Shown here: positions 11,452-59,563 of the stretch, piece after piece
Layout of the letters: each line of letters opens with the position of its first letter
Numbering within the stretch: position 1 is the stretch's first letter
Virus record (IMG/VR): IMGVR_UViG_3300032770_000001
Coordinates: 372,001 to 436,000 of that record
Reading direction: 5' to 3' (one strand)
Length of the DNA stretch: 64,000 bases
Position numbers and translations under genes: made by a program
Notes under the pieces: generated by a model
What the model was told of the DNA's origin: nothing
The model's input: the letters and a program-made list of their open reading frames with translations, nothing else
Databases searched by the model: none

Positions 11452-13557
11452 TTACCGCATTCTTTTGCCGCCCATTTTTCGGACCCAACGTGGGTCTGAA
11501 CGGCGTCCTGCGCCGGGGATTCCCGGCGTTCCCATACCCGGCACCCCGCCGCCCATGCGCTGCATACGCTCGCGAAGACGGAGTTCCGCCATGCTGACAC
11601 CCTCAGTGGAAATCAGGCGTCCGGCACCACGGGCTGCCTGCTGTTGAACCACGAGCGAACGGCCTGTCGGGTCGAGTCGCAGGTTGCCCTGTTCGATGAG
11701 CCATTTCTGAGCGAGCAGAGCCACAAGCTGAGTCGCGTCCACCATGTCGTCATGGGCTCCCTTTTCAATCGGGGCGTGCACGCGGATGCGATACTTGGAT
11801 ATGACATCGGTTTCCACCATCTTGATTTCATCCACGTATTTCTGGATGTCGGGGAAGAAGGCGGTTTTGTCGTTGATGAAACCACGGAGAGCATACGCCA
11901 TCTCCGAGTTGATCGCCGGGGTCAGGTTCACAAGCTCCATGCCGCGAATGTCGTTCTGTTCGAGCAGGGCGATAAGCTGACGACCTGCGTGTTGGTCGCA
12001 GACACCTTGGTAGCATGGCAACTGTTTGTTCATGTAGTTCAGCCATACGAGCACGTCACCCAGCGGCAGAACTTGGAAGTCTACGTATTTCTTCTTACCT
12101 TCCGGATCAGGTTTGACGCCCGGACCTATGAATTCTTCGCCGCAGATCATGCGGTCGATGTAGTCATAAACGAGCACGATACCGTGGTTGACGCCTTGAA
12201 CTTCAGGACGCTGACGGAACTCAAGGTGACCGATAGCCAGAGCGGTAGCGTCAGACGCGGTCGAATTCGGATCGGTGACGTTGATGCCGCCAAGGTCAAG
12301 ACCCCAGAAGTATTGGCGTCCCAACTGCTCAAGGCTGAATCGGGTAAGATTCTTACGACCGGGATCGATACATGCACGCACGTCCACTTCGCGGACATAC
12401 GATTCGGACGATTCCAAGAATTGTCCGCCGTATTCGGCCTTGAAAGTCAATGGGTTCTTACGGTGCTTGTCACGCAAGAAGCCCGGTTTGAGGGCTGGGT
12501 TCATTTCCGCTGATGAACAGGCAAGCACGAACGTGGGGTTGTCGTCGTTGACGCCATCTTGCAATGCCATCTTGTAAAGGTCGTACATCATACCGACCTT
12601 CTTGAGAGGCGAGGAGATCGACAGAATCATCGAGTCCTGATATTGAACTTTCTGGGTGACTCGCTTACCGTTCTCATCGAGAACCGGATTCCCATTCTCA
12701 TCTTCAGCATCGACAGTTTCGTAGTGATGGAAATCACCAGCAGCCGGGGTTGCGGCGACGTACATGTCTTCTGACGTTGAACCTTTTTCGGAACGGAAGT
12801 GAGCGAACTCGTCCAATGCTAGGAAGACCGATGAAGGGCCGCGCACGGCGTTGGTGGTGCAAGGCAGTGACCACACAACGACCGATGGCTTAGCGTCTTT
12901 GCGATCTTGATCGGCACGCGAACGGAACGTCAGGCTCTTTGAGTTGTTGTCTTTCAGGTAACCATTGAACCACTGCGCACGGTTGACGGCAGCCGAGAGT
13001 TTCTTGAACAAACGTCCGGCTCCGGTTTCGTCCTGAGCAAGGAAAGTGAAATCAATCTGTGAGCCATCTGCCATGCCGAAGTGCTGCTGCGGCGAGTAGA
13101 TATTGAGAAGCAGGTAGAGGCGGTACGCGGCGATGGCGGCGACAAGTTCAGATTTACCACCACGGCGACCGCAGAATATGACGCCTTCGTTGAAGCCACG
13201 AGCCGGGATGTCCCGCCAGTCGTCGATGTTGCAGCGACCCTCTTCGTAGCAGATATGCAGGTATTCTTCTTCCGTGACTGTGCGAATGAGTTGGTCACGG
13301 AAAGTGTTCCACATGGGCACCATGCCCCATGGGGTGCCGTCCGGTTGCTTGATAGTGTCCGCCCAGTACGGCTTATAGTCGAAGGGAACCGCACACAGAG
13401 CCTTGAGGATCACTCGCTGAACGGGGCGCAGAATAATGCCCGTGCCGCCCGGTCCTTCGACGAAGTCGATGGCGTTCAGCTTATGTGTTGGGTCATCGAT
13501 ATGGTCGAGCGTCAGATCGGCTACGACCGACTTATTCTTACCACGTTGAATCGGCAT
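11452..13557 (-). CDS. terL: Terminase large subunit
   Basis: LRPVQ adenine-binding motif, Walker A CGRRGGKS, Walker B LALDE, coupling ISSP, nuclease GLDLG and HDDMVDA. Confidence 0.92.
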   Translation of the reverse strand: MPIQRGKNKSVVADLTLDHIDDPTHKLNAIDFVEGPGGTGIILRPVQRVILKALCAVPFDYKPYWADTIKQPDGTPWGMVPMWNTFRDQLIRTVTEEEYLHICYEEGRCNIDDWRDIPARGFNEGVIFCGRRGGKSELVAAIAAYRLYLLLNIYSPQQHFGMADGSQIDFTFLAQDETGAGRLFKKLSAAVNRAQWFNGYLKDNNSKSLTFRSRADQDRKDAKPSVVVWSLPCTTNAVRGPSSVFLALDEFAHFRSEKGSTSEDMYVAATPAAGDFHHYETVDAEDENGNPVLDENGKRVTQKVQYQDSMILSISSPLKKVGMMYDLYKMALQDGVNDDNPTFVLACSSAEMNPALKPGFLRDKHRKNPLTFKAEYGGQFLESSESYVREVDVRACIDPGRKNLTRFSLEQLGRQYFWGLDLGGINVTDPNSTASDATALAIGHLEFRQRPEVQGVNHGIVLVYDYIDRMICGEEFIGPGVKPDPEGKKKYVDFQVLPLGDVLVWLNYMNKQLPCYQGVCDQHAGRQLIALLEQNDIRGMELVNLTPAINSEMAYALRGFINDKTAFFPDIQKYVDEIKMVETDVISKYRIRVHAPIEKGAHDDMVDATQLVALLAQKWLIEQGNLRLDPTGRSLVVQQQAARGAGRLISTEGVSMAELRLRERMQRMGGGVPGMGTPGIPGAGRRSDPRWVRKMGGKRMR

Positions 13558-14231: not shown

Positions 14232-17200
14232 TTATTCCTTGGTGCCGCAGACGAACTTGTACTTCGCGATCATGCTGTCCGTATCGATATTCTCAATGCG
14301 AACGAACACTTCATACACGAAGCCGCCGCCGTCTCCCTCATGCCAGACTGCTGCCTGTGCGAACGCGGTATTGATGGCGTCCTGCACTTCGCTATCTGTC
14401 AGCTTGTCGAGCAGATACTTCACGCGACTCTGGGTGTTGACCAAGTTGAAGCTGGACAGACCTTGCGGCTGCTCGATGTTGGCAAGCTGGATTTCACCAG
14501 TGCCCGGAACCTTGTCTAGGATCGGACGGTTGGTGACTTTGAATGCCGCCACGAACGTCGCTGCGATCTCACCGCAGACTTTCTGGAGGAAGAGAGCAAA
14601 TTGTTTTGCCTCATCAGCACCAGCGATCTTACCTGCGATTGCTTTCAGCGCCGGGCCGCCCGTGTAGTTGGCGTGATACTCTTCCATGAACATCTGTCCA
14701 GCCCCACGGTTGTTGACCTTGCTGTGACCATCGGCTGCCGGATCGGTAGCCTTCTTCGAGGCAATCGAATTGATCGCCTTGCCGGGAACCGTGCTCTGGT
14801 TCATGAAGAACTCATCATAGAACATCGGCCCGCGAATTTCATCTTCCTTGCGGAACGGTGCGCCTTCGAGAACCTGCGGCTTGCCGTCGCGACCGATGCC
14901 CATAGCACCAGCCGGATCAGTTGAAACATACGCCACGATGGTTGGATCGAGGCTGGCTTCGACCGCCGCTTCGATTGCCTGCTCGGACGGAAGTTCATGC
15001 GCATCGCCGGAGATGTCCGGGTAGAGCATTGGTGAATTGGTCGCGTTTGGATAGTCCACGATCTCGTGCTGGAGATCGGGATAGAACTCTTTCACGACCT
15101 GACCGGGGAAGAACAGGTTAAAGCCTGCTTCCTTCTCGATATCCTCCGGCGACTTGGCTGCGCCTTCGCCAGCCTTCTTGCCTTCAGTTTCGGTGTGCGG
15201 CTTCTCCTGCCATTCCTTGCAGTTCGTTCCCTTCTCGTGCATGTTCCAGTGACCCTGCGTCTTGCAGTAGCCGACCGTCTTACCGTTGGTGTCCTTGGCG
15301 GAAGTTTTGAGTGGGGAGCCCTCATACTTCGCCGGATCGATACCATATTCGGCAAGAATCGAACGAGACGTAGCTTTATCCGGCCCGCCCATCACGCCGA
15401 CCATCGCATCGGGCATCTGAAGCGTCTTGATGGCAATCTTCAACTGGTGCCACTCTGGTGAGCCCTTAGCGGGCATCGGCTTTGCTGCTGTTTTGAGTGA
15501 ATTCATTTTGATCCCCATATCTTTCAACATCTTGTCATCAGCCTTGCTGGTCTGCGGATACGCATCCGGATTCTGGAGGCGCTCTTCATCCATAGCCGAC
15601 GTTGCAATCTCTTCCCAATCCAAATCGCCCAGTTCTTCTTCCCACGAACTGGTGCCGCCGATGTCATAGAAGAGACCTTTGAACTGGTCGCCGTAGTATT
15701 TCACTTTCTGCTCACGGCTCATGCTCTGAAGCTGTTCCTGCGTCGGTTTCGGAGCCCCGCCTTCCAACTGCTCACGCTCATACTGACCACGTTCGCTACG
15801 GGCATCCTCAGCGTTTGCAGCGGCGAAATCGCGGGTCTCTTTCTCCTGTTTCTTAAAGAAACGGGCAAACTGGTTGCCCAGTTCCGCAGGTGTCATGCCC
15901 TTCTTCAAAGCATTGCGAGTCAGATTGATCTTCGTGTTGTACGAGGCTTCCGTGTTGTCAATCAACAGAGCCACGTGCCACGTCAACCAATTCGACCAAC
16001 CGTTGTAATCTGCCTTCTTACAGAGGGCGATTTTGCTACCGAACTTGGCTTTCGCTTTCTTCTCGAAATCCGCCGCCGCCTTCTTGGTCGAAAAGTGCGC
16101 GATGCGAACCTTGCCTTGCAGGGTGAAAGCGATGTGAGCCGATCCACGCTTGAAGGTGAAGACTGTATCCTTGCCGTCATCCTTACCTTCCACTTCACTG
16201 TAGATGTTGATGCCGCGCTCCTGAAACCACTGCGCTGCCTCAGCCGTCGTATTCACGTGTCCGGCTTCTTCAACCGTTCCCATCTCATCGCGAATTACGC
16301 AAGTCAATGGGCGAGTCGGTGAGACTTCGCTGTGCTTCTCGAAGTTCGGTGGGTGACCATTCAGGTCTACGCCGCCGAACGGCCCTCCTGCTGGTTGCAG
16401 GGTATTTTTGTCGCCATGTTCTCCCCCAATCGGTGCGGTGTCGATGTGGCGAGTGTCATTCGGATTCTCGGCATCAGTCGCCCCATGCTTATGGGACTCC
16501 ATGTTCTTCAAGCCTTCTTTGGCCGCGCCTTCAGACTTGAAGGATTCCAGAATCTTATCGGTGTCGTGCTGCTTGATGCACCATTCCGCCAATTCACCCT
16601 TTGAATTGCGGTGACCGGGGCACTTGCTCACATACGCCACTTTGTTCTTAGCGGTGACGTTGATGTTGATCGTCACGCCCTTACCTGCCGGGATCGAGAC
16701 GGACGAGCCGCCTGCTTCCGCTTTATCCTTGGCAGCTTCAACCTCTTCCTGCTTCTGATCGATGGGTTTGCCAATCTCCATCTCAGCCTGACCTTCGATG
16801 GCATCCTTGATCGCCGTTACATTTGGACGTTCAGTGTGCTTGATGTCACCGTCAGTGACCGGAACACCTGCCTCTTCGTGTGTGTTCTCGGTGAACTCCT
16901 GTTTCTCCTGCACACCACCGGGTTGGTCGGCGATCTGCTCTTGCTTCTGAGCGATGTTGTCCATCACGGCTTCCATCTTCTCACCCAGATCGTTATCGCT
17001 CTGGATGATGGCGGCTGCCGATTTCTTAGCGCCCTGTTTCGGCTGATTCTTCATGTCCTCGAACAATTCCTCTTCGCTCGCATACTGCTTGGCGTCTGGA
17101 GGAACGAGGAATACGTCGTAGGTCTTGTGACGAGTTTCCACGATGAACACCTGCTGACCTTCCGGCGTCAAATACAGCAGATGATCCGGACTGTAAGCAT

Positions 17201-17387
17201 ACGGGCTGGGAATTTCTGGAATGCGCTTAATGCGCTTGCCCGTATCCTGCAAGGTATCCATGTAGCGGCTCAAGCCAACGTGTGACGTGATGCGCTTGAT
17301 GCGCTTCGCCGGGAGTTCGCCTTCAGCTTTCTTCTCGTACTCCCCGACCTTTGCGTATTCTTTCAGAGCTTCGATGTTAATTGGCAT
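14232..17387 (-). CDS. Large acidic multi-module protein (putative internal head polyprotein)
   Basis: Modules separated by KKA/KVA/KTA/KEA; includes a YNGWSNWLTW module. Confidence 0.7.
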   Translation of the reverse strand: MPINIEALKEYAKVGEYEKKAEGELPAKRIKRITSHVGLSRYMDTLQDTGKRIKRIPEIPSPYAYSPDHLLYLTPEGQQVFIVETRHKTYDVFLVPPDAKQYASEEELFEDMKNQPKQGAKKSAAAIIQSDNDLGEKMEAVMDNIAQKQEQIADQPGGVQEKQEFTENTHEEAGVPVTDGDIKHTERPNVTAIKDAIEGQAEMEIGKPIDQKQEEVEAAKDKAEAGGSSVSIPAGKGVTININVTAKNKVAYVSKCPGHRNSKGELAEWCIKQHDTDKILESFKSEGAAKEGLKNMESHKHGATDAENPNDTRHIDTAPIGGEHGDKNTLQPAGGPFGGVDLNGHPPNFEKHSEVSPTRPLTCVIRDEMGTVEEAGHVNTTAEAAQWFQERGINIYSEVEGKDDGKDTVFTFKRGSAHIAFTLQGKVRIAHFSTKKAAADFEKKAKAKFGSKIALCKKADYNGWSNWLTWHVALLIDNTEASYNTKINLTRNALKKGMTPAELGNQFARFFKKQEKETRDFAAANAEDARSERGQYEREQLEGGAPKPTQEQLQSMSREQKVKYYGDQFKGLFYDIGGTSSWEEELGDLDWEEIATSAMDEERLQNPDAYPQTSKADDKMLKDMGIKMNSLKTAAKPMPAKGSPEWHQLKIAIKTLQMPDAMVGVMGGPDKATSRSILAEYGIDPAKYEGSPLKTSAKDTNGKTVGYCKTQGHWNMHEKGTNCKEWQEKPHTETEGKKAGEGAAKSPEDIEKEAGFNLFFPGQVVKEFYPDLQHEIVDYPNATNSPMLYPDISGDAHELPSEQAIEAAVEASLDPTIVAYVSTDPAGAMGIGRDGKPQVLEGAPFRKEDEIRGPMFYDEFFMNQSTVPGKAINSIASKKATDPAADGHSKVNNRGAGQMFMEEYHANYTGGPALKAIAGKIAGADEAKQFALFLQKVCGEIAATFVAAFKVTNRPILDKVPGTGEIQLANIEQPQGLSSFNLVNTQSRVKYLLDKLTDSEVQDAINTAFAQAAVWHEGDGGGFVYEVFVRIENIDTDSMIAKYKFVCGTKE

Positions 17388-20300
17388 CGCCTTCCGTTTC
17401 CTTCTCCACTACGAAATCTGCAAGATCACCAATCCCAAGATCGATTGGACGTTCTTCATCCTCTTCGTCACCGTAAGCAGCACAGCCTTGCTTTTCAGCC
17501 AGAGTCCACGTGCTTGCGAGTTCCAACTGATTCACAAGTTCATCAGTGCTGGTGCCGGAATCAACCAGTTCACCATCCGCGTAAATTTCCCAGCCGTTGG
17601 GAGACGTATGGACAACCACGCGATTACCAGTTTCCGGACCCATGAACGTACCGGGATCGCCTTCATCAGACCAACCCATGCCGCTCAGGGCTTCAACATA
17701 CGGGAACTCCCCAGTTTCAGTCTGCGGAGCCGCTTTGACTGATGCCGCGAAATGAGCCGGGTTGACAGTGTCGGTTGAGGCCGAATCACTCGTCAAGTCC
17801 TTCTTGTCCGCGTCCACAGCTTTGCGTGCCTGAGCGAGGTCACCATCGATTGCTTCCGCCGTCTTAGACTTCTCGACGTTGGTTTTCGGAACCATCGGAT
17901 CAGCCCCACCTTTTTCATTGGATGGGTTATCGACCGTGTCCGCGACCTTCGCCGCTTCCGGAACCGACTTAGTTGGCTGCGAGATGTCCTTGTCAACCGT
18001 GTCCGGGCTGACCGTCTTGGACTTCGCTTCGGAGATGTCGCCGCTCACGTCGTCGGCAGTCTTCGCCTTCTCGTGGTCGGTCTTCACTTCCATTGCACCT
18101 GCCCCACCCGCTTCGTTTGCCGGATTGTCGGCGGTGTCAGCCTGCTTTGCATTGTACTGTTCGTGACGCTGCACGGTCGGGGACAAGTTATCGCCCTCGC
18201 CTGCACCGCCGTCACCGGAGTCTGACCCCTCAGAAACTTCGTTGTCAGCCACGTCCGCTGTTTTCTCGCTGCCCATCATCGGTTTGGTCATGTGATGAAG
18301 GGACAGATCACGCACGTCAGACTGGTCAATCGGCTTCTCGCCCGTGGTGTATCCGGACGGCCAACGGTTGTAATCATCGCGGCAGTCACCGTAGAAGTCA
18401 GGCGGGTGTGTCCCACCGCAGCTTCCACAATCGACCCAGTCATCCGGTGGATTTTCGGCATCAATTGGCGGCGGATTCGTCGCGCTGTAAGGCGCACCTG
18501 CCGTCTTTTCCTCGGAGGCGAAGTAGTTCATCTCTTCGTCGCCAAGCTCCGGCTCTTCATCTTCTGCGTAGGTGAACACGCCAGACGCCATAGCGTCTTC
18601 AGCGCAACCGTCGCAGAACGCGGTTCCAGTCACGTCATCCATGTCAACACGACGGAGAATACAGCTTGCTGGAACAAGGCACTGTGCTACGCCTTCGTGC
18701 TGTGGGCAGCCGGGATCGGTGCATTCACAGTCGCCTTCGACTTGGTAAAACCCGTCCGGAGCAGCCGTCTTTTCCTCGGATGCCATCAGGGTATCCATCT
18801 CATCGAGTGAGGATTCGATATCGAAATCGTTCTCACGCGGGTCGCGGTGAGTGTAGACCTCAGCCGTCAACGGGCTGTCAGCCGGAGTCCACGATGTGCG
18901 GCACTTACCGCATTCCCATTCGAAGCTGGATGCAGCACCGATGTGGTAAATGCGATCTTCTTCGGGCAGATCGGTACCGAACGGTTCAGAGCAATTGTCG
19001 CAGTAGTTCACGTCGTCCCACGAATAGGCGGACACGGCACCGCACTTCGGACACTCTTCAGCCGAACCGTCAGCCAGCAGCGATTCCTTAAGGCCCTGAG
19101 CATCAACTTCATAACCTTCGGAATCGACCGCAGCTTGCTTAGATTCAGCGTCGTCACTCTTCTCTTCGGAGCCGGACTCTTCCTTTTTCTCGGACTTGCC
19201 CTTCTCGCGATTCTTCGACCATTCGGACTTGGCACCACCGCCGCCCTTGTCTTCGTCTTCCTTGGTCTTCTCATTTTCGAAGTCAGATTCCTGATTCCCA
19301 GCTTCCGAGTCAGAGACCGACTTGTCGTCTTCCGGGGTATCGGATTCCCACGGCTTCTCCCACTCAGGCTTTTCGCTGCCTTCGGGAGCATCTTCACCGG
19401 GGAGAGGAACAACCGGAGCCGGACCGAACTCTTCCATGTTGTCGAAGATGTCGTCCTCGGTCATCGGGATGTCGGCGAACTTGGCACGCTGAGAGCCGTA
19501 CTTGCGCTGCATCTCTTCTTCGCGCTTCTGTGCCGCCGTCTTGGATTTCTGCGAACGCGCATCGTAAGACTCGCGGGTTGGGCCGCCAGCAATCAAACCC
19601 GCGACGATTTCAGACGCCGCGCTTTTCTTGATCGAAGCGAACTTGCCGCCCTGCTTGTTGTAGTGCTCGTATTCGGAGTGGATCAGGTTGTCGTCGCCGA
19701 CATACAGATCATCCTCACCGAACGACTTGGCGACTTCAGTGAGCTTGTCACCCAAACCGCCCCCATCCAACGCCTGACGATCCCAGAATCCTGCACCGTG
19801 ACCGTTGCGGGTCAGCCAGAAATCGTGTCCAGCTTGCTCTTCTGACGACCACTCACCGTGTCCGTCGTAGCCGGGACGCTGGTAAGCCTCGTTGAGCAGG
19901 GCTTCAGCTTTCTGTTGGAACGCCTGACAATCCTGAGACATCTTGTTGAGCGTCTCTGGAGCGATGTCGCGGATATCGTAATTGCGATCCAAAGGCTCAC
20001 CGCCACTCGGATCGGAGTTGTCATTCGAAGACCACAGGGCGGCTGTAACATAAGCCGTCGTGAAGTCATCAAGCTGCTGAGCAAGCTTCTTCATAGAGCC
20101 AGCCCACCATGCTGCTTTCTTCGACTTCTGTTTCTTGAGCGAAGATGACATCGACATCGGATTCGGCCCCCACTTGCCAGCGTCGATCTCAGCCTGATGA
20201 TCGAACGTTGCGTGATGTGCCTGATTGTCCTGACTCATGCTGGCAGCGTATTCCATCATGTGGTCTTTGTGTTTTTCGAGACCCTTCTTGTCGCCAACAC

Positions 20301-21813
20301 GGGCAGCTTCCCAAGCGGCACTTGCGGATGCGCTCAGGCTGTCTGTTTCTTGAGCGTGTAGACGCCCAACGTCTGCCTTCGGAGTAAACTCCATGCGCTT
20401 TGCTTGCTTGCGCTCTTCTTCCGGACGGCGAGGAACACCAGTCTCATCCAGAGCGATACCAATCGGTGCGCTCGTGAGTTCGACCACAGGCATGTCTTTT
20501 TCGGATGTGTAGCCTTCCTTCTCCTGATTGCCCTTTTCGGCGGCTTCGGTGCCCGGCCCAACGTTTGTGAACGGGGTCTCGTGCACTGCGGCACCGCTCT
20601 TGTTCTTCTCGCGAATCTTGGCGAAGTCGATACGCATACCAGTACCCTCGCACTGAGGGCAGTTGTCGCGCTGGACACCGGGCTTGCAAGAACAAGGCTG
20701 TCCGGTCTTCGGCTGGTATTCAGCCGTTGTAGGCATCGGCTTCACTGGGGTGCCCGGACGCGGGACGGAAGTCACCGCCTGCGGACGTGAAGATGGATCG
20801 GCGAACAGACTCATGTCCTTTGGATTGCCGGAGATTTCGTCGGTTTTATCAGCCGGACCAGCCTTCTTGACAACGTAACCCTTGTCATCGCAATAGCGGC
20901 AGCCGTCGCCCTCACACTTCGGGCACTCTTCCTGAGCCGTCTTCTGCTCGGAGGAGATACGTGGAACCTGCACGTTCTTGGTTGGAGCCTTGCCTTCCGA
21001 CGCATCCTCAACGCCCTCAGTTTCCGGCAACATGGAGTTGCGGAGTGCCTGATCGAGCGACTCGAATACGTTCATTTCCTGAGGATCGAGTTCCTGTTTG
21101 GTGACCTCGTCGGCAGTCTTGCGGGTCAGCAGAATGGTCTTCTTGAGCGAACTTTGCTTGGTCAACAGCGGGTATTCCTTCAGCGGATTCTCAGCAATCG
21201 CCGGGAAGTTCAGCTTCGGAGTGATGTTGTCCACGCTCCACTGAGTCGTATCCACATCGGTCATGATGGCGTCGAACGCCGAAGAGAGACGCGGATCGAA
21301 ATATGCGGAGAAGATCAGGTGACGAACCAAATTGGCGAGTTGGTTGTCGTCCTTGGTAAAGTGGAAGCCGATGTACTCACGCTGGTTAACCCAGTGTGGG
21401 GCGAAGATGATGAGGGCGGCGAATTTGCCGTCGCCGACACCGAACAACTCTTCCTTGATGGAATCGTAATCTGCCTGCGAATACTCGTCGAACTCGCTAT
21501 CGCCGATCTTGTGCGAGATCAGGTCGGACATTTCCTCACCGCCGTAGGTACGCACGAGGCAACCGTAAAGCAGAGAGGTCGGGAATTCAGCACCGCTCTT
21601 GCCCGTTACAGACGGAGGAATGACGTAGATGCGACCGATGGAAATGTTCTGACGGAAGCCCTTGTAGAAGGCTTCGAAGGACTGAATCGTGCCCGAATTG
21701 CGAGCTTCCTTTTCGCCAGCCTTAATTGCCTCGACAACTTTGGCGAGGAGTCCATCGTTCACCATGTAGCCTTGGAACGACTTCAATGCGATGCTGTTTC
21801 CACTGACGCCCAT
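17377..21813 (-). CDS. Large acidic multi-module protein (putative internal head polyprotein)
   Basis: Repeated (S)E(E)KTA junctions; Zn-finger modules; AGHDFWLTRNGHGAGFWDR module. Confidence 0.7.
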   Translation of the reverse strand: MGVSGNSIALKSFQGYMVNDGLLAKVVEAIKAGEKEARNSGTIQSFEAFYKGFRQNISIGRIYVIPPSVTGKSGAEFPTSLLYGCLVRTYGGEEMSDLISHKIGDSEFDEYSQADYDSIKEELFGVGDGKFAALIIFAPHWVNQREYIGFHFTKDDNQLANLVRHLIFSAYFDPRLSSAFDAIMTDVDTTQWSVDNITPKLNFPAIAENPLKEYPLLTKQSSLKKTILLTRKTADEVTKQELDPQEMNVFESLDQALRNSMLPETEGVEDASEGKAPTKNVQVPRISSEQKTAQEECPKCEGDGCRYCDDKGYVVKKAGPADKTDEISGNPKDMSLFADPSSRPQAVTSVPRPGTPVKPMPTTAEYQPKTGQPCSCKPGVQRDNCPQCEGTGMRIDFAKIREKNKSGAAVHETPFTNVGPGTEAAEKGNQEKEGYTSEKDMPVVELTSAPIGIALDETGVPRRPEEERKQAKRMEFTPKADVGRLHAQETDSLSASASAAWEAARVGDKKGLEKHKDHMMEYAASMSQDNQAHHATFDHQAEIDAGKWGPNPMSMSSSLKKQKSKKAAWWAGSMKKLAQQLDDFTTAYVTAALWSSNDNSDPSGGEPLDRNYDIRDIAPETLNKMSQDCQAFQQKAEALLNEAYQRPGYDGHGEWSSEEQAGHDFWLTRNGHGAGFWDRQALDGGGLGDKLTEVAKSFGEDDLYVGDDNLIHSEYEHYNKQGGKFASIKKSAASEIVAGLIAGGPTRESYDARSQKSKTAAQKREEEMQRKYGSQRAKFADIPMTEDDIFDNMEEFGPAPVVPLPGEDAPEGSEKPEWEKPWESDTPEDDKSVSDSEAGNQESDFENEKTKEDEDKGGGGAKSEWSKNREKGKSEKKEESGSEEKSDDAESKQAAVDSEGYEVDAQGLKESLLADGSAEECPKCGAVSAYSWDDVNYCDNCSEPFGTDLPEEDRIYHIGAASSFEWECGKCRTSWTPADSPLTAEVYTHRDPRENDFDIESSLDEMDTLMASEEKTAAPDGFYQVEGDCECTDPGCPQHEGVAQCLVPASCILRRVDMDDVTGTAFCDGCAEDAMASGVFTYAEDEEPELGDEEMNYFASEEKTAGAPYSATNPPPIDAENPPDDWVDCGSCGGTHPPDFYGDCRDDYNRWPSGYTTGEKPIDQSDVRDLSLHHMTKPMMGSEKTADVADNEVSEGSDSGDGGAGEGDNLSPTVQRHEQYNAKQADTADNPANEAGGAGAMEVKTDHEKAKTADDVSGDISEAKSKTVSPDTVDKDISQPTKSVPEAAKVADTVDNPSNEKGGADPMVPKTNVEKSKTAEAIDGDLAQARKAVDADKKDLTSDSASTDTVNPAHFAASVKAAPQTETGEFPYVEALSGMGWSDEGDPGTFMGPETGNRVVVHTSPNGWEIYADGELVDSGTSTDELVNQLELASTWTLAEKQGCAAYGDEEDEERPIDLGIGDLADFVVEKETEGDAN

Positions 21814-40342: not shown

Positions 40343-43300
40343 TTAGGCGACTTTCAGCCCGTCGCCCTGAATACCTGCAACAATATCTTGAATATAGCGG
40401 TGCTCGACAACCACAGAGTCGCCCCAGTATGTTACCCCGCTTTCAGGGTTAGGCTCGCCGCTGCTGTAGCTTGAGTCGAGGTTTTCGATGATCCAGTCCT
40501 CAGCCGCCGCCGTCATTGGGGTCAACAGGAAGATGCCGCCCTCGTTGCGAACTTCAAAATCCGGCCCCTCGTAGGGAGCACCTTGTGGGGTGTACTGCGG
40601 CTTATCCGCCTTTTTCTTACGACCACGTGCGCCGGGGTGACCGCTTGACTTCTTGCTGCTGGTCAGCGGAAGTGCCTGCTGATTCGGATCGGGAGCAGGT
40701 GCTTCCGGTTGCTCTTCCTCGTACAGGTTGCCGCCGTACTGCATGAAAACCTCGTGCCCCTGCTTGAGTTCCTCGACCATATCTTCGATCTGGTAACGCT
40801 CGTGCCAGTACAGATTGCCGTTCGGATCAGCGAAGATTTCACCGGAGGTCAGAGCCCCGATGTCGGCGGGATTGACATTCTCCCAGCCGTTGGTGAAGAA
40901 GTCTTCCATGAGTTCCCAGATGCTCTGGTACGTCTGCGCATCTTGCGGTCCACCCTGAGCAACTTCCTGAAGCAACTGTGCAGTCGGCTTCAGTTTGATG
41001 CCGCCCTTACCGTAGAGGACATCGACGTAGGTGCCTTTGTCTTCGCCCTTGGTCGGCGTGCGTGCTTCCTGCGCATCCACTTTGTTCTGCTCGTCCTGCT
41101 GTTTCAACTCATCAAGCGTCACAGCCGTTTTCTTTGATGCGACAGCGGAGTTCGGAACGTAACCGACTTCCGGCTGTTTTGGCTTCAGACCGAGTTGGTC
41201 TGGAGTCTTCGGATTGCCACGCTGCTTCATGTTGAGAATTGCTGGATTTGCCGCTTCCTTGTCAGATGCGATCACTTCACCTTCCTCGTCATCATCATCG
41301 AACGGGACGTAGCCATCATAATCGGAACGCTCCGGATAGAATGCTGCCCATTCCGCCAATGCTTCAGCGTTGCCGCGACCGGATTCCTTGAAGCGAGCGA
41401 TCATCTCGTTCAGATACTCATAGCCATGCGTGGTCAGCGGGTTCTTTAGGAACTCACCGCAGCCTGCGCAGTTCTGCGGACTGTCGGACTCTTGATCGAA
41501 GAACGGACCTTTCGGATAGTTGTCGGAGTCATAGCTTGACTCGTCTTCCGGGTTCTCCGGGCCTTCGCCGTTCGCGTCGATTCTCTGCGCGATTTTTATA
41601 GCGCAGTCTTCGCACCACACGTCAGCGGCGTAGATGTATTCACCGTCGTTAGAACCACGGATACCACTGTCGGCACCGGGCTCGAATGCTTCTTTTTCCA
41701 TTGTGCCCTCTTTCACTTGCTCGTTCTTAAATGTCACGAAACGGTGACGCCCACCGTGCAGAGAAGTTCCGCAGCAATCGCAAGGACGTTTCGAAAACTC
41801 ATCGATGCCTTCGCCCGTCTCGCTGTCGAAGTCAGGAACCAGCCAACCCAATCTCTGGATGCCTGCCTGAATCTGCTCCATGCGCTTGTTAGCCTCTTCG
41901 CCCTGATAGTAATAATCAAGGCCGGAGTAGTCATCGTTCACTGCCGCTTGCAGACAGTCGTCGCACAACCACAAATTGTCCTGCTCAATTTCAGCGGCAG
42001 TTTTGTTTGCCTGAATGCCCATGTCTTTCAACATCTGCTTCTCTTCGTCCGTGGGGTTGTATTCCTTCTCGTGCCCGTGGAACTCTTCGATACCCGCAGG
42101 CTCTTCCAATTCTACGTCACCGGGGGTGATGTAGTCCGCGAGGCTCTGCAACTCAGCCAGTTCCGCATAGCTAATGCGCTCGGCACGAAGTTGGCTACGG
42201 AGATATTCCAGACGCTCCTGAATTTCCTCTGGCTCCAACTCGTCCTCGTCCTCATCAATCCATGCCTTCTTGCTCGATGCTTCCTTGGAGCAAGTGCCGC
42301 AGTACCACTTGTTGCCGATCTCGTGGCTGCCTTCGTCTACGTCAGATGAATCGAACACCTTACCGCAGCCAGCACATTCAACTTCGCGTGAAGAGGTCTT
42401 GTCGCTGCTTTCGACCGCATCCAGTCCCTCATCCACATGACGATCCATGCAGGATTCGTCGCCAGACTCAATCTCTTCGAGGTCGAGACCTTCGATGCTT
42501 TGCCCACCCTCGGCATCGACCACCGACCAAATCGCACCACACGGTCCGCACGTAACCCACCACTGTCCGTGCTCGAACGCAGGCACGCAACCTTCGTGAA
42601 TCTCAGTGAGAGGGTGAGACGCGATTAGACGCTCTACTTCCATCTCCATTTCCGGAGTGTTCTGCTCCGTTTTCAACGCTGCTTTCTTCATGGTGCCCTC
42701 TTCTGACGACATGTGGAATTTCTTGTTGGGAAGCTCCGGTGGGACGGTCTTCCGCTTCAGCCCTTCGTTTTCTTTCTCCTGTGGCAGCACAGCCATCGGT
42801 GCCCCCGGCTGTCCGGGGATCGGCTGCACTACCGGATTTGGTTCCGCTGTGGGTGCTTGCGGTTGCGCTGCTGGTGCCTGAACCGGAGCCGGAGCCGCCG
42901 CCACAGTCATGGAAACAACCTTCTCACCCGGCTTGAGCTTCTTGGTAACGGCTTTCTCCGCTCCCTGATAATCGTTGCCGCCTACGGTTTCTTCACGCTG
43001 ATTGCCTTTGGTGTCACGCAGGGTGACCTTCCACTTGGCTTCCTTCAACATCTTGATACCGTGATTGCGATTGACACTGTGCTCATTCGCGGTGTCTTCA
43101 GTCGTGCCCCATACCGGACAATTGCGGCACTGCCACATCTTCTCCGGAACGGTGACGCCCTTGAGAGCGTCCGGGTTGCGAGCTAACAACTTGTCCAAAC
43201 GTCCAGCCGTCTTGCTTGCACCCTTCATTTTCTTATAAGCTTCGAATTTCTGATCCTGCGGTACACCCGGCATGTGTTCTCCACCACCACGACAAGGGCG

Positions 43301-45391
43301 TAAATTGCAGGTTACACATTCCAGACAACGAGGGCAATACAGATGCGTGCGCTCTTGCTCATCATAGTCCGGTTCCTCAGGCATGTCGGCAGGCAAGAGG
43401 TTCTCCGCAAATTCTGCGGTCTTTGACGCTTGCTTGAGCTTCGAATAACGTTCCCGCATCTGTGCTAATGTCTTTTCGTCGAAACGGATGATGTCGGCAT
43501 TGCGCTTCAGACCCTCTTCAGAGCCAAATCCGCCAGTCACCAACTTCTCCTCATCGTTCACGAAATGGTAGGAACCGTCGTTGAGCTTCTCAACTTTCCA
43601 CTTGGGGTCATCGAGTTTGATGCCAACGGTCTTCGGCCCGGCGGGTTTCTTGCCGCCATGAATGTATTGCTCGTAATAAGCATCGTGCTCTTCAGCACTG
43701 ATTTTGCCAGCATAGCGCAATGCGTCAATCACGCCAGCGATGTAGTTGTAGGCGTTTGAATTCTTTGCTGAGTCATCCCAGATTTTCGTCAGGAAGGTGC
43801 CGACATCCAAACCACGGAGGCTATCCTTCAACTCGGCGACTTTAACTGCTCCGGCATGATAACTGCCTTGCGTGCGTCCATGCGGTGGACGCCCGGTGTC
43901 GCCTTCAGTGATCTGTGGCTGAATGCCATCATAGAATTGATCGCCGCCCTCAGCGCCGTCTTTCTTCTTAGGTTCGGTCTTCTTCATCAACTCCACGGTT
44001 TTGTCGAAGTTTTCGCTGTAGACCGGGCAATCGATGCGGTGCCGTCCATGATAGCCGCCGCAGCACTTTGAAGTGTCAATCGTCGGAACCGAAGTATCGG
44101 CAGCTTCTTTGCAAATGCAATTTTCCTTCACCCGGTCACACGCATCACAGTACGGCACACCAGCAGGCGGGTGAATATCCCGCTCAGTCTGAACCGCAGC
44201 CGCTTTCGGATCATTGATGCCGGGGACGATACCGTGTTCCCAATTCTTGCCACAGTCATTGCACTTGGCAGTCTCGAAGTCGGTCGGCATGAGCCCGTAG
44301 TCTGAGGAGCCGCAGTGTGGGCACTTCGGTTTAGCCGATGCCGTGGCGTGTACTTTCGCCTGCGGTTCTTTCATCTGAGTGATGAGATTGATAAGTTGGT
44401 ATCCAGTCTCTTCGCCACGAGGCAACTGTCCTTCGGTCGCAAACTCTTCAAGTAGACCGGGCAGTTCCGAGTAGTAACGCTTCAATGAGTCCTGACCGAG
44501 GTTGGTGACTTTCAGCCAGTCCTGTACCAGATCGCTCACCGTAATCTTGGCTTCCCCAGTGCTCTCCTGTGCGTGCTTCCAGAACAGTAAGAGAACGATC
44601 ATGTTGTACTTGGCAGCCGTGCGGGATACCTTGGTTGGGAGCCATGCGGCGAATCGCTTCGCTACGTTCTTGAATTCCTGCTCGGATTCAAACTCAGTGT
44701 GCGGCGATGGAGCATTCAACTGCTGACTGTCGATCAAACTATAAGTTTCGTCCTCCTCGTGCTTGCCGCCAGCAGGCTGCTCGCCGGAGACTTCCTCCGG
44801 ATGCTGCACCTGACGGATATAGCTCTTGGCACGCTCGATGCGGAAGGTAAACTGCTTCTTCAGGAATTCCGTAATCTGTTCGGCCACTGGGAGCTTCTTG
44901 ACGCCAGCGGGAAAGTTCTTGATGGCTCGCGGAAAGTCCTGCATCGCCTTGCCGTGCTGGAGCACGTAAAGGATGACGTGATAGATCGCCTCATCCTTCA
45001 GTTCGAAGTCGAGGGTTGTGGATGTGAGTGAGGGAACGAAGACTGTCTGAAACCACTTCGACCAATCCATCTTGGGATCGACCGGATATCCCGCCTGCTC
45101 AATGTAGGACTTGACGAACTTGTCGAAATCCTTGTTGTAGGCGAAGACGTAGCGGATTCGTGACGCAATACGCGCCTGACCCGGTGAGATCGGGTGGAAA
45201 TTGGCTGGGGTCTGAACAGGCTTCCCGGTGTACGGGTCGGCCAACCTGAAGGCGTAGCCGTCCGGTCCGGCGACTTTAGACACCACCCGGTAGGCGGAAC
45301 CATCGAGAGTATCGACAATTTGCCCCGGCGCGATAAGGCGGGAAAACTTGGTCAGGTTCGCCGCTGGTACTCGTACAGCGTCCTGAGGCAT
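40343..45391 (-). CDS. Very large multi-module protein (putative internal head polyprotein), possibly sigma-like N-terminal module
   Basis: About 15 small modules separated by KTA/KEA/KKA/KVA. Confidence 0.7.
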   Translation of the reverse strand: MPQDAVRVPAANLTKFSRLIAPGQIVDTLDGSAYRVVSKVAGPDGYAFRLADPYTGKPVQTPANFHPISPGQARIASRIRYVFAYNKDFDKFVKSYIEQAGYPVDPKMDWSKWFQTVFVPSLTSTTLDFELKDEAIYHVILYVLQHGKAMQDFPRAIKNFPAGVKKLPVAEQITEFLKKQFTFRIERAKSYIRQVQHPEEVSGEQPAGGKHEEDETYSLIDSQQLNAPSPHTEFESEQEFKNVAKRFAAWLPTKVSRTAAKYNMIVLLLFWKHAQESTGEAKITVSDLVQDWLKVTNLGQDSLKRYYSELPGLLEEFATEGQLPRGEETGYQLINLITQMKEPQAKVHATASAKPKCPHCGSSDYGLMPTDFETAKCNDCGKNWEHGIVPGINDPKAAAVQTERDIHPPAGVPYCDACDRVKENCICKEAADTSVPTIDTSKCCGGYHGRHRIDCPVYSENFDKTVELMKKTEPKKKDGAEGGDQFYDGIQPQITEGDTGRPPHGRTQGSYHAGAVKVAELKDSLRGLDVGTFLTKIWDDSAKNSNAYNYIAGVIDALRYAGKISAEEHDAYYEQYIHGGKKPAGPKTVGIKLDDPKWKVEKLNDGSYHFVNDEEKLVTGGFGSEEGLKRNADIIRFDEKTLAQMRERYSKLKQASKTAEFAENLLPADMPEEPDYDEQERTHLYCPRCLECVTCNLRPCRGGGEHMPGVPQDQKFEAYKKMKGASKTAGRLDKLLARNPDALKGVTVPEKMWQCRNCPVWGTTEDTANEHSVNRNHGIKMLKEAKWKVTLRDTKGNQREETVGGNDYQGAEKAVTKKLKPGEKVVSMTVAAAPAPVQAPAAQPQAPTAEPNPVVQPIPGQPGAPMAVLPQEKENEGLKRKTVPPELPNKKFHMSSEEGTMKKAALKTEQNTPEMEMEVERLIASHPLTEIHEGCVPAFEHGQWWVTCGPCGAIWSVVDAEGGQSIEGLDLEEIESGDESCMDRHVDEGLDAVESSDKTSSREVECAGCGKVFDSSDVDEGSHEIGNKWYCGTCSKEASSKKAWIDEDEDELEPEEIQERLEYLRSQLRAERISYAELAELQSLADYITPGDVELEEPAGIEEFHGHEKEYNPTDEEKQMLKDMGIQANKTAAEIEQDNLWLCDDCLQAAVNDDYSGLDYYYQGEEANKRMEQIQAGIQRLGWLVPDFDSETGEGIDEFSKRPCDCCGTSLHGGRHRFVTFKNEQVKEGTMEKEAFEPGADSGIRGSNDGEYIYAADVWCEDCAIKIAQRIDANGEGPENPEDESSYDSDNYPKGPFFDQESDSPQNCAGCGEFLKNPLTTHGYEYLNEMIARFKESGRGNAEALAEWAAFYPERSDYDGYVPFDDDDEEGEVIASDKEAANPAILNMKQRGNPKTPDQLGLKPKQPEVGYVPNSAVASKKTAVTLDELKQQDEQNKVDAQEARTPTKGEDKGTYVDVLYGKGGIKLKPTAQLLQEVAQGGPQDAQTYQSIWELMEDFFTNGWENVNPADIGALTSGEIFADPNGNLYWHERYQIEDMVEELKQGHEVFMQYGGNLYEEEQPEAPAPDPNQQALPLTSSKKSSGHPGARGRKKKADKPQYTPQGAPYEGPDFEVRNEGGIFLLTPMTAAAEDWIIENLDSSYSSGEPNPESGVTYWGDSVVVEHRYIQDIVAGIQGDGLKVA

Positions 45392-58603: not shown

Positions 58604-59563
58604 TTAGTTCTCGCCGTAGTTGGCGGTCGAGTTGAAGCGACCATTGACCGTAAGACGCTGCACGCCGGACGGGTTGAACACGAGGAAGCCGAGGTTCTCG
58701 AAGATCGAGAAGCCGATCTGACGGAGGTCAGGACGGTCGGCGCTCATGACCGTGAGCGGAATACGCTCTGGGATAACGCCGAGGAACTCTGCGTCCGCCA
58801 GAATGTAGATCGAGCCGTAGCCGACCTTACGCGACTGGAGGAGCGTTGCGCCCCAGAGATAGCCCATCACGCCCGTTTTCAACAGCTTGCGCTGTGTTTC
58901 GCGGTCGATGTTCTGTTGGGTCCACTTCAACAGGTCCGTGTAGTCACGGGGGTTGAAGAAGACGAACGCGACTGAGAGGTCATGACGCTGCACCTGACCA
59001 AAGCCGTCTGCCATCGAGTTGATGTCAATCGGAGCGTTGATCGGAATGTCAGGGTTGTAGACCGGATCATTCGAGTTCTTACCCGCTGCGCTGTTCGCGA
59101 CACCGTCAAACAGAACGAACACGTATCCGTCTTCGGCTGCGCCCACTTCGGCTTTCGCCAAGTTCAGTGAACGAGCAACCAAGTCGAAACGGCGCTCTTT
59201 GATCTGCGTGATCGGGATCATCGGATTGGACACGATTTCGAACGTCGGAACCGTGACGCGCTTCGGTTTTGTAACGCGGACGATGTCACCACCTTCTTCG
59301 CCGACGATGAATGCTTCGACGAAGGACGAACCCGGAGTCGAGCCAACGGTCATCGCGTTGACATCGAATTCCTTGTCGTAGATGGGCAGTGCGCCATCCG
59401 GAAGAGTTTCGACCATGAGAGCCTTGCGAGCAATGCTCATATAGTCACGGCGACGACGCAGGGACGGACCGAGCGAAGCCGCAAGCTTCTGACGCCCACC
59501 CGCCGTCTTCAAAAGTTGGCCGAGCATTTGCGTCTGCTGTTGTGTGCGAGAAAGTTGTGCCAT
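58604..59563 (-). CDS. Major capsid protein (HK97 fold)
   Basis: Position after scaffold and decoration genes, strong RBS and terminator; RRDY.SIARK...LPDGALPIYDK, FEI.SNP, GYLWGA motifs of large-phage MCPs. Confidence 0.85.
   Translation of the reverse strand: MAQLSRTQQQTQMLGQLLKTAGGRQKLAASLGPSLRRRRDYMSIARKALMVETLPDGALPIYDKEFDVNAMTVGSTPGSSFVEAFIVGEEGGDIVRVTKPKRVTVPTFEIVSNPMIPITQIKERRFDLVARSLNLAKAEVGAAEDGYVFVLFDGVANSAAGKNSNDPVYNPDIPINAPIDINSMADGFGQVQRHDLSVAFVFFNPRDYTDLLKWTQQNIDRETQRKLLKTGVMGYLWGATLLQSRKVGYGSIYILADAEFLGVIPERIPLTVMSADRPDLRQIGFSIFENLGFLVFNPSGVQRLTVNGRFNSTANYGEN

What the first reader, a model, noticed from the sequence alone, without database searches (positions are those of the whole stretch)
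15490..20090. Recognisable phage domains embedded exactly between K-x-A sites in the 1051- and 1478-aa ORFs
Seen: KKLA|QQLDDFTTAYVTAALWSS...AGHDFWLTRNGHGAGFWDR...DLYVGDD (about 19660-20080) and KKA|DYNGWSNWLTWHVALLIDN...DWEEIA (about 15580-16010) begin within a few residues of the motif. My recollection is that both are normally small free-standing phage proteins starting near these residues. They are the cleanest internal tests of the polyprotein model.
Basis: partly seen in the sequence, partly recalled or inferred. Interest (0 to 1): 0.6.

Follow-up and report, generated by a model that had tools for sequence, protein, structure and literature searches.

The report
Phage cassette proteins with protease-site junctions
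Two giant genes of a 456-kb soil phage string together small protein domains that other phages encode as separate genes, each preceded by a short Lys-x-Ala motif that also marks the ends of the capsid protein and of the head protease, so the giants are probably cut into many small proteins inside the phage head.

Summary
P0002 residues 579-714 are a full-length copy of a roughly 135-aa free-standing phage protein family (phrog_1915). Homology to 120 stand-alone relatives starts at residues 577-584, right after K576-L-A578, and ends at 711-714. P0001 residues 460-595 are a DUF7249/phrog_871 domain that starts one residue after K457-K-A459.

The real motif is narrower than K-x-A, mostly K-[T/K/Q]-A. 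In the variable parts of 93 related proteins, KTA is the most over-represented of all 8000 tripeptides (321 seen, 47 expected; reversed ATK 49). Homology blocks between relatives begin just upstream of it.

The same motif is found in four other places:
- both K-x-A sites of the major capsid protein, within its first 28 residues;
- invariant positions in the N- and C-terminal tails of the head maturation protease;
- the scaffold-like protein;
- a second cassette-array protein.

Best reading (about 0.6): these are head-packaged "polyvalent" proteins cut after Ala by the head protease. Cleavage is inferred, not shown. The C-terminal domain edges lie 10-40 residues before the next site, and for DUF7249 the stand-alone Met maps 10-13 residues upstream. 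I rate this a new variant of a known kind.

The parts
17377..21813 (-). P0002, a 1478-aa cassette-array ORF. It has a conserved N-terminal domain followed by about 14 modules separated by K-[TKQS]-A.
14232..17387 (-). P0001, a 1051-aa second cassette-array ORF that ends in the conserved bipartite C-terminal domain.
17377..17387 (-). Overlap of the P0002 stop and the P0001 start (GATGCCAATTAA). The same overlap is found in relative L005, which suggests translational coupling of the two ORFs.
21112..21813 (-). Conserved N-terminal domain, P0002 residues 1-234, ending in the conserved LTxKTA|D. It is shared by 92 relatives and by Tunturi_5 gp350. The fold is unassigned.
20080..20088 (-). K576-L-A578, the motif directly in front of domain A.
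19672..20079 (-). Domain A, P0002 residues 579-714. It is a full-length copy of the phrog_1915 family, which elsewhere is a stand-alone protein of about 135 aa.
19618..19644 (-). The next motifs after domain A: KFA 724-726 and KSA 730-732.
16011..16019 (-). K457-K-A459, the motif one residue before the DUF7249 core.
15603..16010 (-). Domain B, P0001 residues 460-595, a DUF7249 / phrog_871 domain.
15486..15494 (-). K632-T-A634, the next motif after domain B. It ends the conserved linker ..MLKDMGIxxxxLKTA.
14235..15134 (-). Conserved C-terminal region, P0001 residues 752-1051, made of two sub-domains (752-880 and 911-1051). It is always C-terminal in 125 clusters. The last 130 aa fold with pLDDT above 90, with no known fold match.
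63716..64000 (-). Head maturation protease P0338, 298 aa. The ORF runs on to window coordinate 64612, beyond the window end. K-x-A sites lie at residues 5, 33, 39, 258, 264 and 270.
61461..63716 (-). Scaffold-like, acidic, low-complexity protein P0335, 751 aa, with 21 K-x-A sites.
58604..59563 (-). Major capsid protein P0337, 319 aa. Its only two K-x-A sites (K19-T-A21 and K26-L-A28, window 59480-59509) lie in the N-terminal arm.
40343..45391 (-). P0336, a 1682-aa second cassette-array protein. It has zinc-ribbon modules separated by ASKTA, ANKTA and SKKTA.
11452..13557 (-). Terminase large subunit, immediately downstream of P0001. The same order is seen in Tunturi_5 (gp350 then gp1).

Best explanation
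P0002 and P0001 are the two translationally coupled halves of a head-associated 'polyvalent' cassette-array protein. The family belongs to a clade of huge soil phages; the cultured relative is Tunturiibacter phage Tunturi_5, whose gp350 is the unsplit version. A conserved N-terminal domain and a conserved C-terminal domain frame a fast-changing string of small modules. Several modules are copies of proteins that other phages encode as free-standing genes, including phrog_1915 and DUF7249. Each module carries a short leader ending in K-[T/K/Q/other]-A on its N-terminal side. I infer that this motif is the recognition site of the phage's own head maturation protease (P0338), which cuts after the Ala (P3 = Lys, P1 = Ala; P1' often Asp, Ala, Ser or Gly) inside the prohead. 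The same enzyme would trim the capsid protein's N-arm, its own two tails and the scaffold. The giant proteins would then end up as a set of domain-sized proteins in the head, available for ejection with the DNA as ready-made early effectors. Shown: domain identities, boundaries, motif statistics, conservation and distribution. Inferred: cleavage, the enzyme responsible, packaging and ejection.
For: (1) Boundaries. Homology to stand-alone relatives starts right after the motif for domain A and one residue after it for domain B.

(2) The motif emerges from an unbiased scan.
- In the variable parts of 93 relatives, KTA is the top tripeptide of 8000 (321 seen, 46.7 expected). KQA and KKA also rank near the top.
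- The enrichment is directional: KTA 321 against ATK 49, KQA 169 against AQK 41.

(3) Modules move together with the motif. HSP starts between relatives are 2.8-2.9 times enriched 1-10 residues upstream of the Ala and depleted downstream. The motif is kept in front of domain A in 11 of 13 relatives and in front of DUF7249 in 6 of 9, in different upstream contexts.

(4) Selection acts at the protein level.
- Motif K and A are better conserved than other K and A residues (p 0.008 and 0.03).
- Codons at the sites are diverse, with 24 distinct 9-mers among 35 sites.

(5) The distribution is that of a prohead-protease substrate set.
- The genome encodes a head maturation protease (phrog_18299, E 2e-15). 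Its Tunturi_5 orthologue gp331 was named the same way by Phold (PMC11924767 Table S3).
- The capsid protein's only two K-x-A sites lie within residues 19-28, where 0.08 would be expected. They are conserved in Tunturi_5 and in 79 relatives.
- In 26 aligned protease sequences, K5/A7, K33/A35 and A272/S273 are invariant or nearly so, inside indel-rich tails.
- 26 of 27 unique proteases have a K-x-A 18-50 residues from the C-end.
- Genome-wide, the motif is enriched only in P0002, P0001, P0336, the scaffold and one 948-aa neighbour.

(6) Precedent. The SPN3US protease gp245 cuts after AXE in the capsid, portal and ejection proteins and removes its own C-terminal propeptide (PMC10052503).

(7) Complex prediction of the protease core with P0002 556-600 gave weak support.
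- The score was 0.37; the best control was 0.02.
- The mark was reached by 58 of 80 solved complexes and 2 of 110 mismatched pairs. At 0.60 or below it was reached by only 7 of the 80 and by both mismatches.
- The runs agree in at least 43% of contacts, and the partner's pLDDT is at least 55.
Against: - There is no direct evidence of cleavage: no proteomics exists for this phage or for Tunturi_5.
- The protease assignment rests on one PHROG family plus a structure-based annotation of the orthologue. Pfam S77 and S78, NCBIfam and PDB sequence searches found nothing.
- Several K-x-A sites in P0002 are poorly conserved (e.g. 291, 316, 565, 724). Some relatives lack the motif in front of the domains.
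- Many relatives are related by descent, so the counts are not independent events.
- A disorder-propensity check showed only a modest shift at the sites.
- The terminal domains have no recognisable fold, so capsid targeting is unsupported.
- The complex result is only 'weak support'.
Confidence: 0.6

Rival explanations
1. The giants are uncleaved multidomain polyvalent proteins. The K-x-A-containing leader is a conserved linker or N-cap of each cassette, with a structural, chaperone-docking or targeting role, and is not a cleavage site.
For: Some polyvalent proteins, such as the N4 virion RNA polymerase, are packaged unprocessed (PMC5512222). The stand-alone P0123 and P0230 keep the motif near their own N-terminus, which could mean it belongs to the domain. 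There are no cleavage data.
Against: A linker role does not explain why the same tripeptide is invariant in the protease's own indel-rich tails, why it gives the capsid protein's only two sites, both in its N-arm, or why it is enriched in the scaffold. Distant stand-alone family members lack it.
Confidence: 0.2
2. The sites are cut, but by another enzyme or at another time. One possibility is autoproteolysis by the conserved N- or C-terminal domain. Another is a host protease with a taste for Ala at P1, acting after injection.
For: Iyer et al. proposed in-cis peptidases that release domains after injection (PMC5512222). The N-terminal domain has invariant Ser177 and Lys200, and its fold is unassigned.
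Against: No peptidase family or fold was detected in either terminal domain. The motif also occurs in P0336, the scaffold, the capsid protein and the protease, none of which has these domains. That points to one trans-acting head enzyme.
Confidence: 0.12
3. The motif is a composition artefact of Lys/Ala-rich low-complexity linkers, or a DNA-level recombination signal that mediates cassette shuffling.
For: The linkers are rich in K, A, E, S and T. Generic K-x-A is not significantly enriched in P0001. The cassettes are clearly shuffled among relatives.
Against: There is a strong forward-over-reverse asymmetry: KTA 321 against ATK 49. KTA ranks first of 8000 tripeptides after correcting for composition. 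Synonymous codons at the sites are diverse, with 24 distinct 9-mers among 35 sites. The motif also occurs in conserved, non-shuffled proteins.
Confidence: 0.05

Closest known systems
Prohead (head maturation) protease processing of head and ejection proteins in large myoviruses: T4 gp21 (L/I-x-E), phiKZ gp175 and SPN3US gp245 (A-x-E)
   Same: One short tripeptide motif is shared by the capsid protein's N-terminus, the protease's own C-terminal tail, the scaffold and internal or ejection proteins. The protease gene lies next to the scaffold and capsid genes. Some substrates carry several sites (PMC10052503).
   Different: The motif is K-x-A, with Ala at P1 and Lys at P3, rather than x-x-Glu. 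From my own knowledge, Ala at P1 with Ser at P1' resembles herpesvirus assemblin sites more than T4-type sites. In the known cases the sites mostly remove one N-terminal propeptide. Here about 15 sites per protein separate independent folded modules, so the product would be a set of small proteins. Cleavage has not been shown here.
Polyvalent proteins of phages and conjugative elements (Iyer, Burroughs, Anand, de Souza, Aravind 2017)
   Same: These are very long phage proteins encoded among virion and packaging genes. They are built of many unrelated small domains that also occur as solo proteins. They show extensive mosaicism between relatives. They are predicted to be packaged, possibly processed, and injected (PMC5512222). 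Relatives here carry an Xre/MbcA/ParS antitoxin-type domain and WGR domains.
   Different: None of the hallmark domains (MuF, zincin-like metallopeptidase, ArdC-N, DarB methylase/helicase, ParB) was detected. Processing there was ascribed to an in-cis metallopeptidase. Here a regular junction motif points to the trans-acting head protease.
T4 internal proteins with a capsid-targeting sequence removed by gp21
   Same: A short N-terminal leader ends in the protease motif in front of a small packaged effector. Compare MAKVGINKKA|DY.. in the stand-alone P0123 and MISKKA|DY.. in P0230.
   Different: In T4 each internal protein is a separate gene. Here many such units are concatenated. The T4 comparison rests on my own knowledge and was not tested here.
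Tunturiibacter phage Tunturi_5 gp350 ('DarB-like antirestriction protein')
   Same: It is orthologous at both ends: 38% identity to P0002 residues 3-302 and 42% to P0001 residues 752-1050. It has the same position in front of the large terminase gene and carries K-[TKQ]-A motifs.
   Different: It is a single 1080-aa ORF with other middle modules and has neither domain A nor DUF7249. The DarB label comes from a Foldseek-based annotation and is not backed by any DarB domain here.

Membership tests
phrog_1915 (small phage protein, function unknown): domain A | Significant match over nearly the whole profile | tested here: met
   E 4.5e-34, profile positions 6-138 of 141 on residues 578-711. There are 6466 homologues, 52-64% identical among the best.
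phrog_1915: domain A | Family members are free-standing proteins of about 135 aa whose ends match the embedded copy | tested here: met
   Among the 120 best, lengths are 121-147 aa in 95. HSP starts fall at 577-584 and ends at 711-714.
Pfam DUF7249 (PF23907) / phrog_871: domain B | Score above Pfam's gathering cut-off | tested here: met
   31.3 bits against a cut-off of 27. Only profile positions 3-31 of 93 aligned. phrog_871 matched at E 7e-8 over positions 10-74 of 140.
Pfam DUF7249 / phrog_871: domain B | Stand-alone relatives start at the K-x-A junction | tested here: not met
   The Met of P0123 lies 10 residues upstream of the junction, and that of the Synechococcus phage protein P0339 lies 13 residues upstream of the conserved Tyr. 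P0235 and P0250 start 2-5 residues before it.
Substrates of a phage head maturation protease | The genome encodes a head maturation protease in the head module | tested here: met
   phrog_18299 'head maturation protease', E 2e-15. The gene lies directly upstream of the scaffold-like gene and about 4 kb from the capsid gene. Pfam S77 and S78 were negative.
Substrates of a phage head maturation protease | One motif is shared by the capsid N-terminus, the protease tails, the scaffold and internal proteins | tested here: met
Substrates of a phage head maturation protease | Cleavage products observed in virions | not testable with these tools
   The Tunturi_5 paper reports no virion proteomics.
Polyvalent proteins (Iyer et al. 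2017) | Many unrelated domains in one polypeptide, also found solo, with mosaic architectures among relatives | tested here: met
   Module map. Relatives range from 818 to 2249 aa and carry different cassettes.
Polyvalent proteins (Iyer et al. 2017) | Encoded among virion or packaging genes | tested here: met
   The ORFs lie directly upstream of the large terminase gene, and the head module is in the same window.
Polyvalent proteins (Iyer et al. 2017) | Hallmark anchor or effector domains (MuF, metallopeptidase, ArdC-N, DarB, ParB and others) | tested here: not met
   No such Pfam or PHROG match in P0001, P0002 or 44 relatives.
P1 DarB-like antirestriction proteins | Methyltransferase and helicase domains | tested here: not met
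   No Pfam, NCBIfam or PADLOC match of that kind. The label on Tunturi_5 gp350 is a Foldseek-based annotation.

The most novel reading that the evidence does not exclude
A clade of huge soil phages makes true polyproteins. Two (with P0336, three) giant precursors are diced by an assemblin-like head protease with a previously undescribed K-x-A specificity. The products would be 20 or more domain-sized proteins stored in the capsid and injected as a ready-made, rapidly reshuffled anti-defence toolkit. New effectors would be recruited simply by inserting a small phage gene behind a K-T-A leader.
Probability: 0.4. Interest if true: 0.8.

Novelty: new variant of a known kind. Interest (0 to 1): 0.62.

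Why it matters
If the motif is a real cleavage site, it gives three things.
- **A new specificity.** This would be a Lys-x-Ala rule for a phage head protease, which lets one read off the mature ends of head proteins across a large, mostly uncultured clade of huge soil phages.
- **A rule for cargo.** It offers a simple sequence rule for spotting proteins that are packaged in the head.
- **A list of candidate effectors.** The set includes phrog_1915, DUF7249, phrog_22197, phrog_19202, antitoxin-like and WGR modules. Their presence in an injected cargo would point to an early host-takeover or counter-defence role for families now annotated only as 'unknown function'.

The cultured relative Tunturi_5 makes this directly testable.

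Tried and rejected
- **Protease families.** Pfam Peptidase_S77 and S78 searches of the whole genome found nothing. The protease was found only through the Tunturi_5 annotation and phrog_18299.
- **Terminal-domain folds.** The N-terminal model had pLDDT 61 and the C-terminal model 70. Foldseek against PDB and BFVD, VIA-align wide and the ESM Atlas gave nothing significant (best Z 3.8, best TM 0.30). The protein-atlas feature search was empty. The terminal domains remain unassigned, and the idea of a Ser/Lys-dyad peptidase in the N-terminal domain has no support.
- **Other libraries.** NCBIfam and PDB sequence searches of P0001, P0002, P0336, P0338 and domain A gave nothing. PADLOC gave only a marginal GajB hit at E 0.0016, which I dismissed.
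- **Disorder propensity.** The TOP-IDP score at motif sites showed only a small shift and is not used as evidence.
- **Nucleotide search.** A search of the phage collection gave only short matches to domain A and to Tunturi_5.
- **Capsid N-terminus across relatives.** The whole stretch is nearly invariant in 79 relatives, so it says nothing specific about the motif.
- **Frameshift fusion.** Not pursued. The conserved ATG..TAA overlap looks like ordinary translational coupling.
- **Paralogues.** There are no stand-alone copies of either domain elsewhere in the genome.

Full report
**Setting**

The window is bases 372001-436000 of a 455,708-bp IMG/VR virus record. The finding concerns two adjacent minus-strand ORFs.
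- P0002 is window 17377-21813, 1478 aa.
- P0001 is window 14232-17387, 1051 aa.
- The large terminase gene lies directly downstream at 11452-13557.

**Check of the observation**

Both quoted peptide strings are present.

Domain A is P0002 residues 579-714.
- It matches phrog_1915 at E 4.5e-34 over positions 6-138 of a 141-position profile.
- A word-indexed search with residues 570-720 found 6466 relatives, mostly stand-alone proteins of 125-145 aa.
- Counting back from the conserved Phe584, the first residue of the 120 best relatives maps to residues 573-581 in 76 cases. Their C-ends map 2-3 residues after Ile711 in 93 of the 120.
- An independent BLAST of residues 400-800 puts 107 of 120 HSP starts at 577-584 and 114 of 120 ends at 711-714. 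Relatives with N-terminal extensions do not align to the P0002 sequence upstream.

Domain B is P0001 residues 460-595.
- It passes Pfam's threshold for DUF7249 (31.3 against 27 bits, but only profile positions 3-31) and matches phrog_871.
- Its one close relative in the word search is a stand-alone 140-aa protein, P0123, 46% identical over 140 residues. P0123 begins MAKVGINKKA|DYEGW, so it keeps the motif ten residues in from its Met.
- A distant stand-alone member from a Synechococcus phage has a 13-residue leader without the motif.
- So the conserved core starts one residue after K457-K-A459, but the stand-alone Met does not map to the junction.

On the C-terminal side, the next motifs lie 10-18 residues after domain A and about 37 residues after domain B. 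'Exactly between' is therefore only half right.

**Is the motif more than chance?**

- Generic K-x-A is enriched in P0002 (22 seen, 10 expected) but not in P0001 (15 seen, 10.2 expected).
- K[KTSQ]A is enriched in both: 14 against 2.5 (p 4e-7) and 8 against 2.5 (p 5e-3).
- Genome-wide, the other enriched ORFs are three large neighbours.

A search using the N-terminal 232 residues of P0002 found 92 relatives of 818-2249 aa on contigs up to 465 kb.
- In their variable parts, an unbiased scan of all tripeptides ranks KTA first (321 seen, 46.7 expected). KQA and KKA also rank near the top.
- The enrichment is directional: KTA 321 against ATK 49, KQA 169 against AQK 41. The logo is roughly K..A-S-S-K-[T/K/Q]-A followed by D, A, S or G.
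- Codons at the sites in this window are diverse, with 24 distinct 9-mers among 35 sites. Selection is therefore on the peptide and not on a DNA word.
- Motif Lys and Ala residues of P0002 are better conserved among relatives than other Lys and Ala residues (p 0.008 and 0.03), although several individual sites are poorly kept.
- These relatives share descent, so the counts overstate the number of independent events.

**Modules move with the motif**

- The closest relative locus, L005, has the same two-ORF arrangement and the same ATG..TAA overlap. It has different cassettes inserted behind KTA sites. It keeps KKVA|AEFDNFT in front of domain A and AKMA|ADHFGYDDW in front of domain B.
- Among relatives that carry domain A, 11 of 13 have [KR]-x-A 1-3 residues before the first conserved residue, in at least three unrelated upstream contexts.
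- Among DUF7249 carriers, 6 of 9 have K-x-A|D directly in front, including two where the module opens the protein.
- In an all-against-all BLAST, HSP starts are 2.8-2.9 times enriched 1-10 residues upstream of the motif's Ala and depleted downstream. The unit of shuffling is therefore leader plus motif plus domain.

**What the proteins are**

- Tunturiibacter phage Tunturi_5 gp350 (1080 aa) matches P0002 residues 3-302 with its N-terminus and P0001 residues 752-1050 with its C-terminus. It sits in the same place, in front of the large terminase gene.
- Nine metagenomic proteins likewise carry both end domains. P0002 and P0001 are therefore a split, expanded version of one protein.
- The C-terminal region occurs in 125 clusters and is always C-terminal.
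- Neither end domain has a recognisable family or fold.
- In 44 relatives the cassettes include phrog_22197, phrog_1915, phrog_19202, an Xre/MbcA/ParS antitoxin-type domain, WGR domains and zinc ribbons. Most cassettes are unknown.
- This fits the 'polyvalent protein' concept of Iyer et al. (PMC5512222) but without its hallmark domains.
- The 'DarB-like' label on gp350 is a Foldseek-based annotation with no DarB domain behind it.

**Independent support for cleavage**

The supplementary annotation of Tunturi_5 names gp331 a head maturation protease (phrog_18299) and gp334 the major head protein. In this genome the counterparts are:
- protease P0338, window 63716-64612, running past the window end (E 2e-15);
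- capsid protein P0337, window 58604-59563 (E 9e-43);
- a 751-aa acidic scaffold-like protein, P0335, between them.

The capsid protein begins MAQLSRTQQQTQMLGQLLKTA|GGRQKLA|ASLG. These are its only two K-x-A sites in 319 residues, where 0.08 would be expected in that stretch. Tunturi_5 has KSA and KLA at the same places.

In an alignment of 26 protease sequences (P0338 plus 25 orthologues), three sites stand out:
- K5-x-A7 is invariant.
- K33-x-A35 is invariant, in the middle of an indel-rich stretch.
- A272-S273 is invariant or nearly so, usually as FAK-x-A|S about 25 residues from the C-end.

Among 27 unique protease sequences, 26 have a K-x-A 18-50 residues from the C-end. In P0338 itself, six of its seven sites lie in the tails.

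The scaffolds show K-x-A 701 against A-x-K 452. A second cassette-array protein, P0336, uses the same ASKTA and ANKTA junctions.

This is the distribution seen for experimentally mapped prohead-protease motifs. One example is AXE of SPN3US gp245, which also removes its own C-terminal propeptide (PMC10052503).

From my own knowledge, phage prohead proteases share the herpesvirus assemblin fold, and assemblin cuts Ala|Ser. The invariant YLSMGC and FVEH motifs are plausible nucleophile and base. This was not tested.

A complex prediction of the protease core with P0002 556-600 gave only weak support.
- The score was 0.37; the best control was 0.02.
- The mark was reached by 58 of 80 solved complexes and 2 of 110 mismatches. 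At 0.60 or below it was reached by only 7 of the 80 and by both mismatches.
- The runs agree in at least 43% of contacts, and the partner's pLDDT is at least 55.

**Mechanism proposed**

1. The two precursors are made late, by coupled translation.
2. They are taken into the prohead. How is unknown; presumably one of the conserved end domains is involved.
3. The head protease dices them after the Ala of K-x-A, while it also trims the capsid protein, the scaffold and itself.
4. The released domain-sized proteins stay in the head and leave with the DNA.

Shown here: domain identities and edges, and the motif's statistics, conservation and distribution. Inferred: every biochemical step.

A side observation fits an early function. 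Stand-alone domain A genes of the phiCbK-like Caulobacter phages lie in the terminal repeats.

**Rivals**

- An uncleaved polyvalent protein whose leader has another role remains possible (0.2).
- Cleavage by another enzyme or after injection is less likely (0.12), because proteins without the end domains carry the same motif.
- A composition artefact or a DNA recombination signal is largely excluded.

**Novelty**

A literature search for polyprotein, prohead protease and bacteriophage together returned nothing describing such an arrangement. I rate it a new variant of a known kind. It combines prohead-protease processing with polyvalent proteins, with a new motif and a true multi-product architecture. 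It is testable in the cultured relative Tunturi_5.

Noticed in passing
L002 413-415 and 836-841; L003 likewise: In a related soil contig the DUF7249 module is its own gene, with a TAA stop followed directly by its ATG. That gene ends at an in-frame TAG, and homology to P0001 (..NWKEIAT..) continues two codons later in the same frame. This may be a split domain or TAG read-through.
   Followed up: partly
window 40343-45391 (-): A second cassette-array protein (P0336, 1682 aa) has an N-terminal domain of about 350 aa followed by many zinc-ribbon modules separated by ASKTA, ANKTA and SKKTA. It shares the linker ..MLKDMGIxxNKTA|A with P0001.
   Followed up: partly
window 63716-64000 (-) and on to 64612 (L007 1318-2214): The head protease carries an invariant Cys-x-x-Cys ... 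Cys-x-His insertion (C172, C175, C186, H188) right after the YLSMGC motif. This looks like a zinc ribbon inside a prohead protease.
   Followed up: no
G000:C1:273759-274640 (+), outside the window: A second gene matches the major-head-protein family phrog_2522 (E 4e-17, 372-aa open frame), far from the head module.
   Followed up: no
window 17850-18260 (-), P0002 residues about 1187-1320: There are internal repeats of a low-complexity unit, K[QTV]A-DT[AV]DNP[AS]NE ... K-T-A. These segments are conserved in many relatives and contain no hydrophobic core, so they may be spacer or propeptide-like pieces that get destroyed rather than functional domains.
   Followed up: no
window 17377-17387: The P0002 stop and the P0001 start overlap as GATGCCAATTAA. 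The same overlap occurs in L005 with TAG as the stop. In Tunturi_5 and nine metagenomic relatives the protein is unsplit.
   Followed up: partly
L093 640-3486 (-) = G000 436640-439486, just past the window end: A 948-aa ORF next to the protease is also enriched in K-x-A (13 seen, 4.6 expected). Tunturi_5 has an 828-aa 'DNA ejection protein' (gp328) in the same neighbourhood, with 19 K-x-A sites. I did not test whether the two are homologous.
   Followed up: partly
window 21825-24421 (-): The 648-aa and 216-aa ORFs directly upstream of P0002 have no family match. By position they correspond to Tunturi_5 gp348 and gp349. They are conserved neighbours of unknown role.
   Followed up: no
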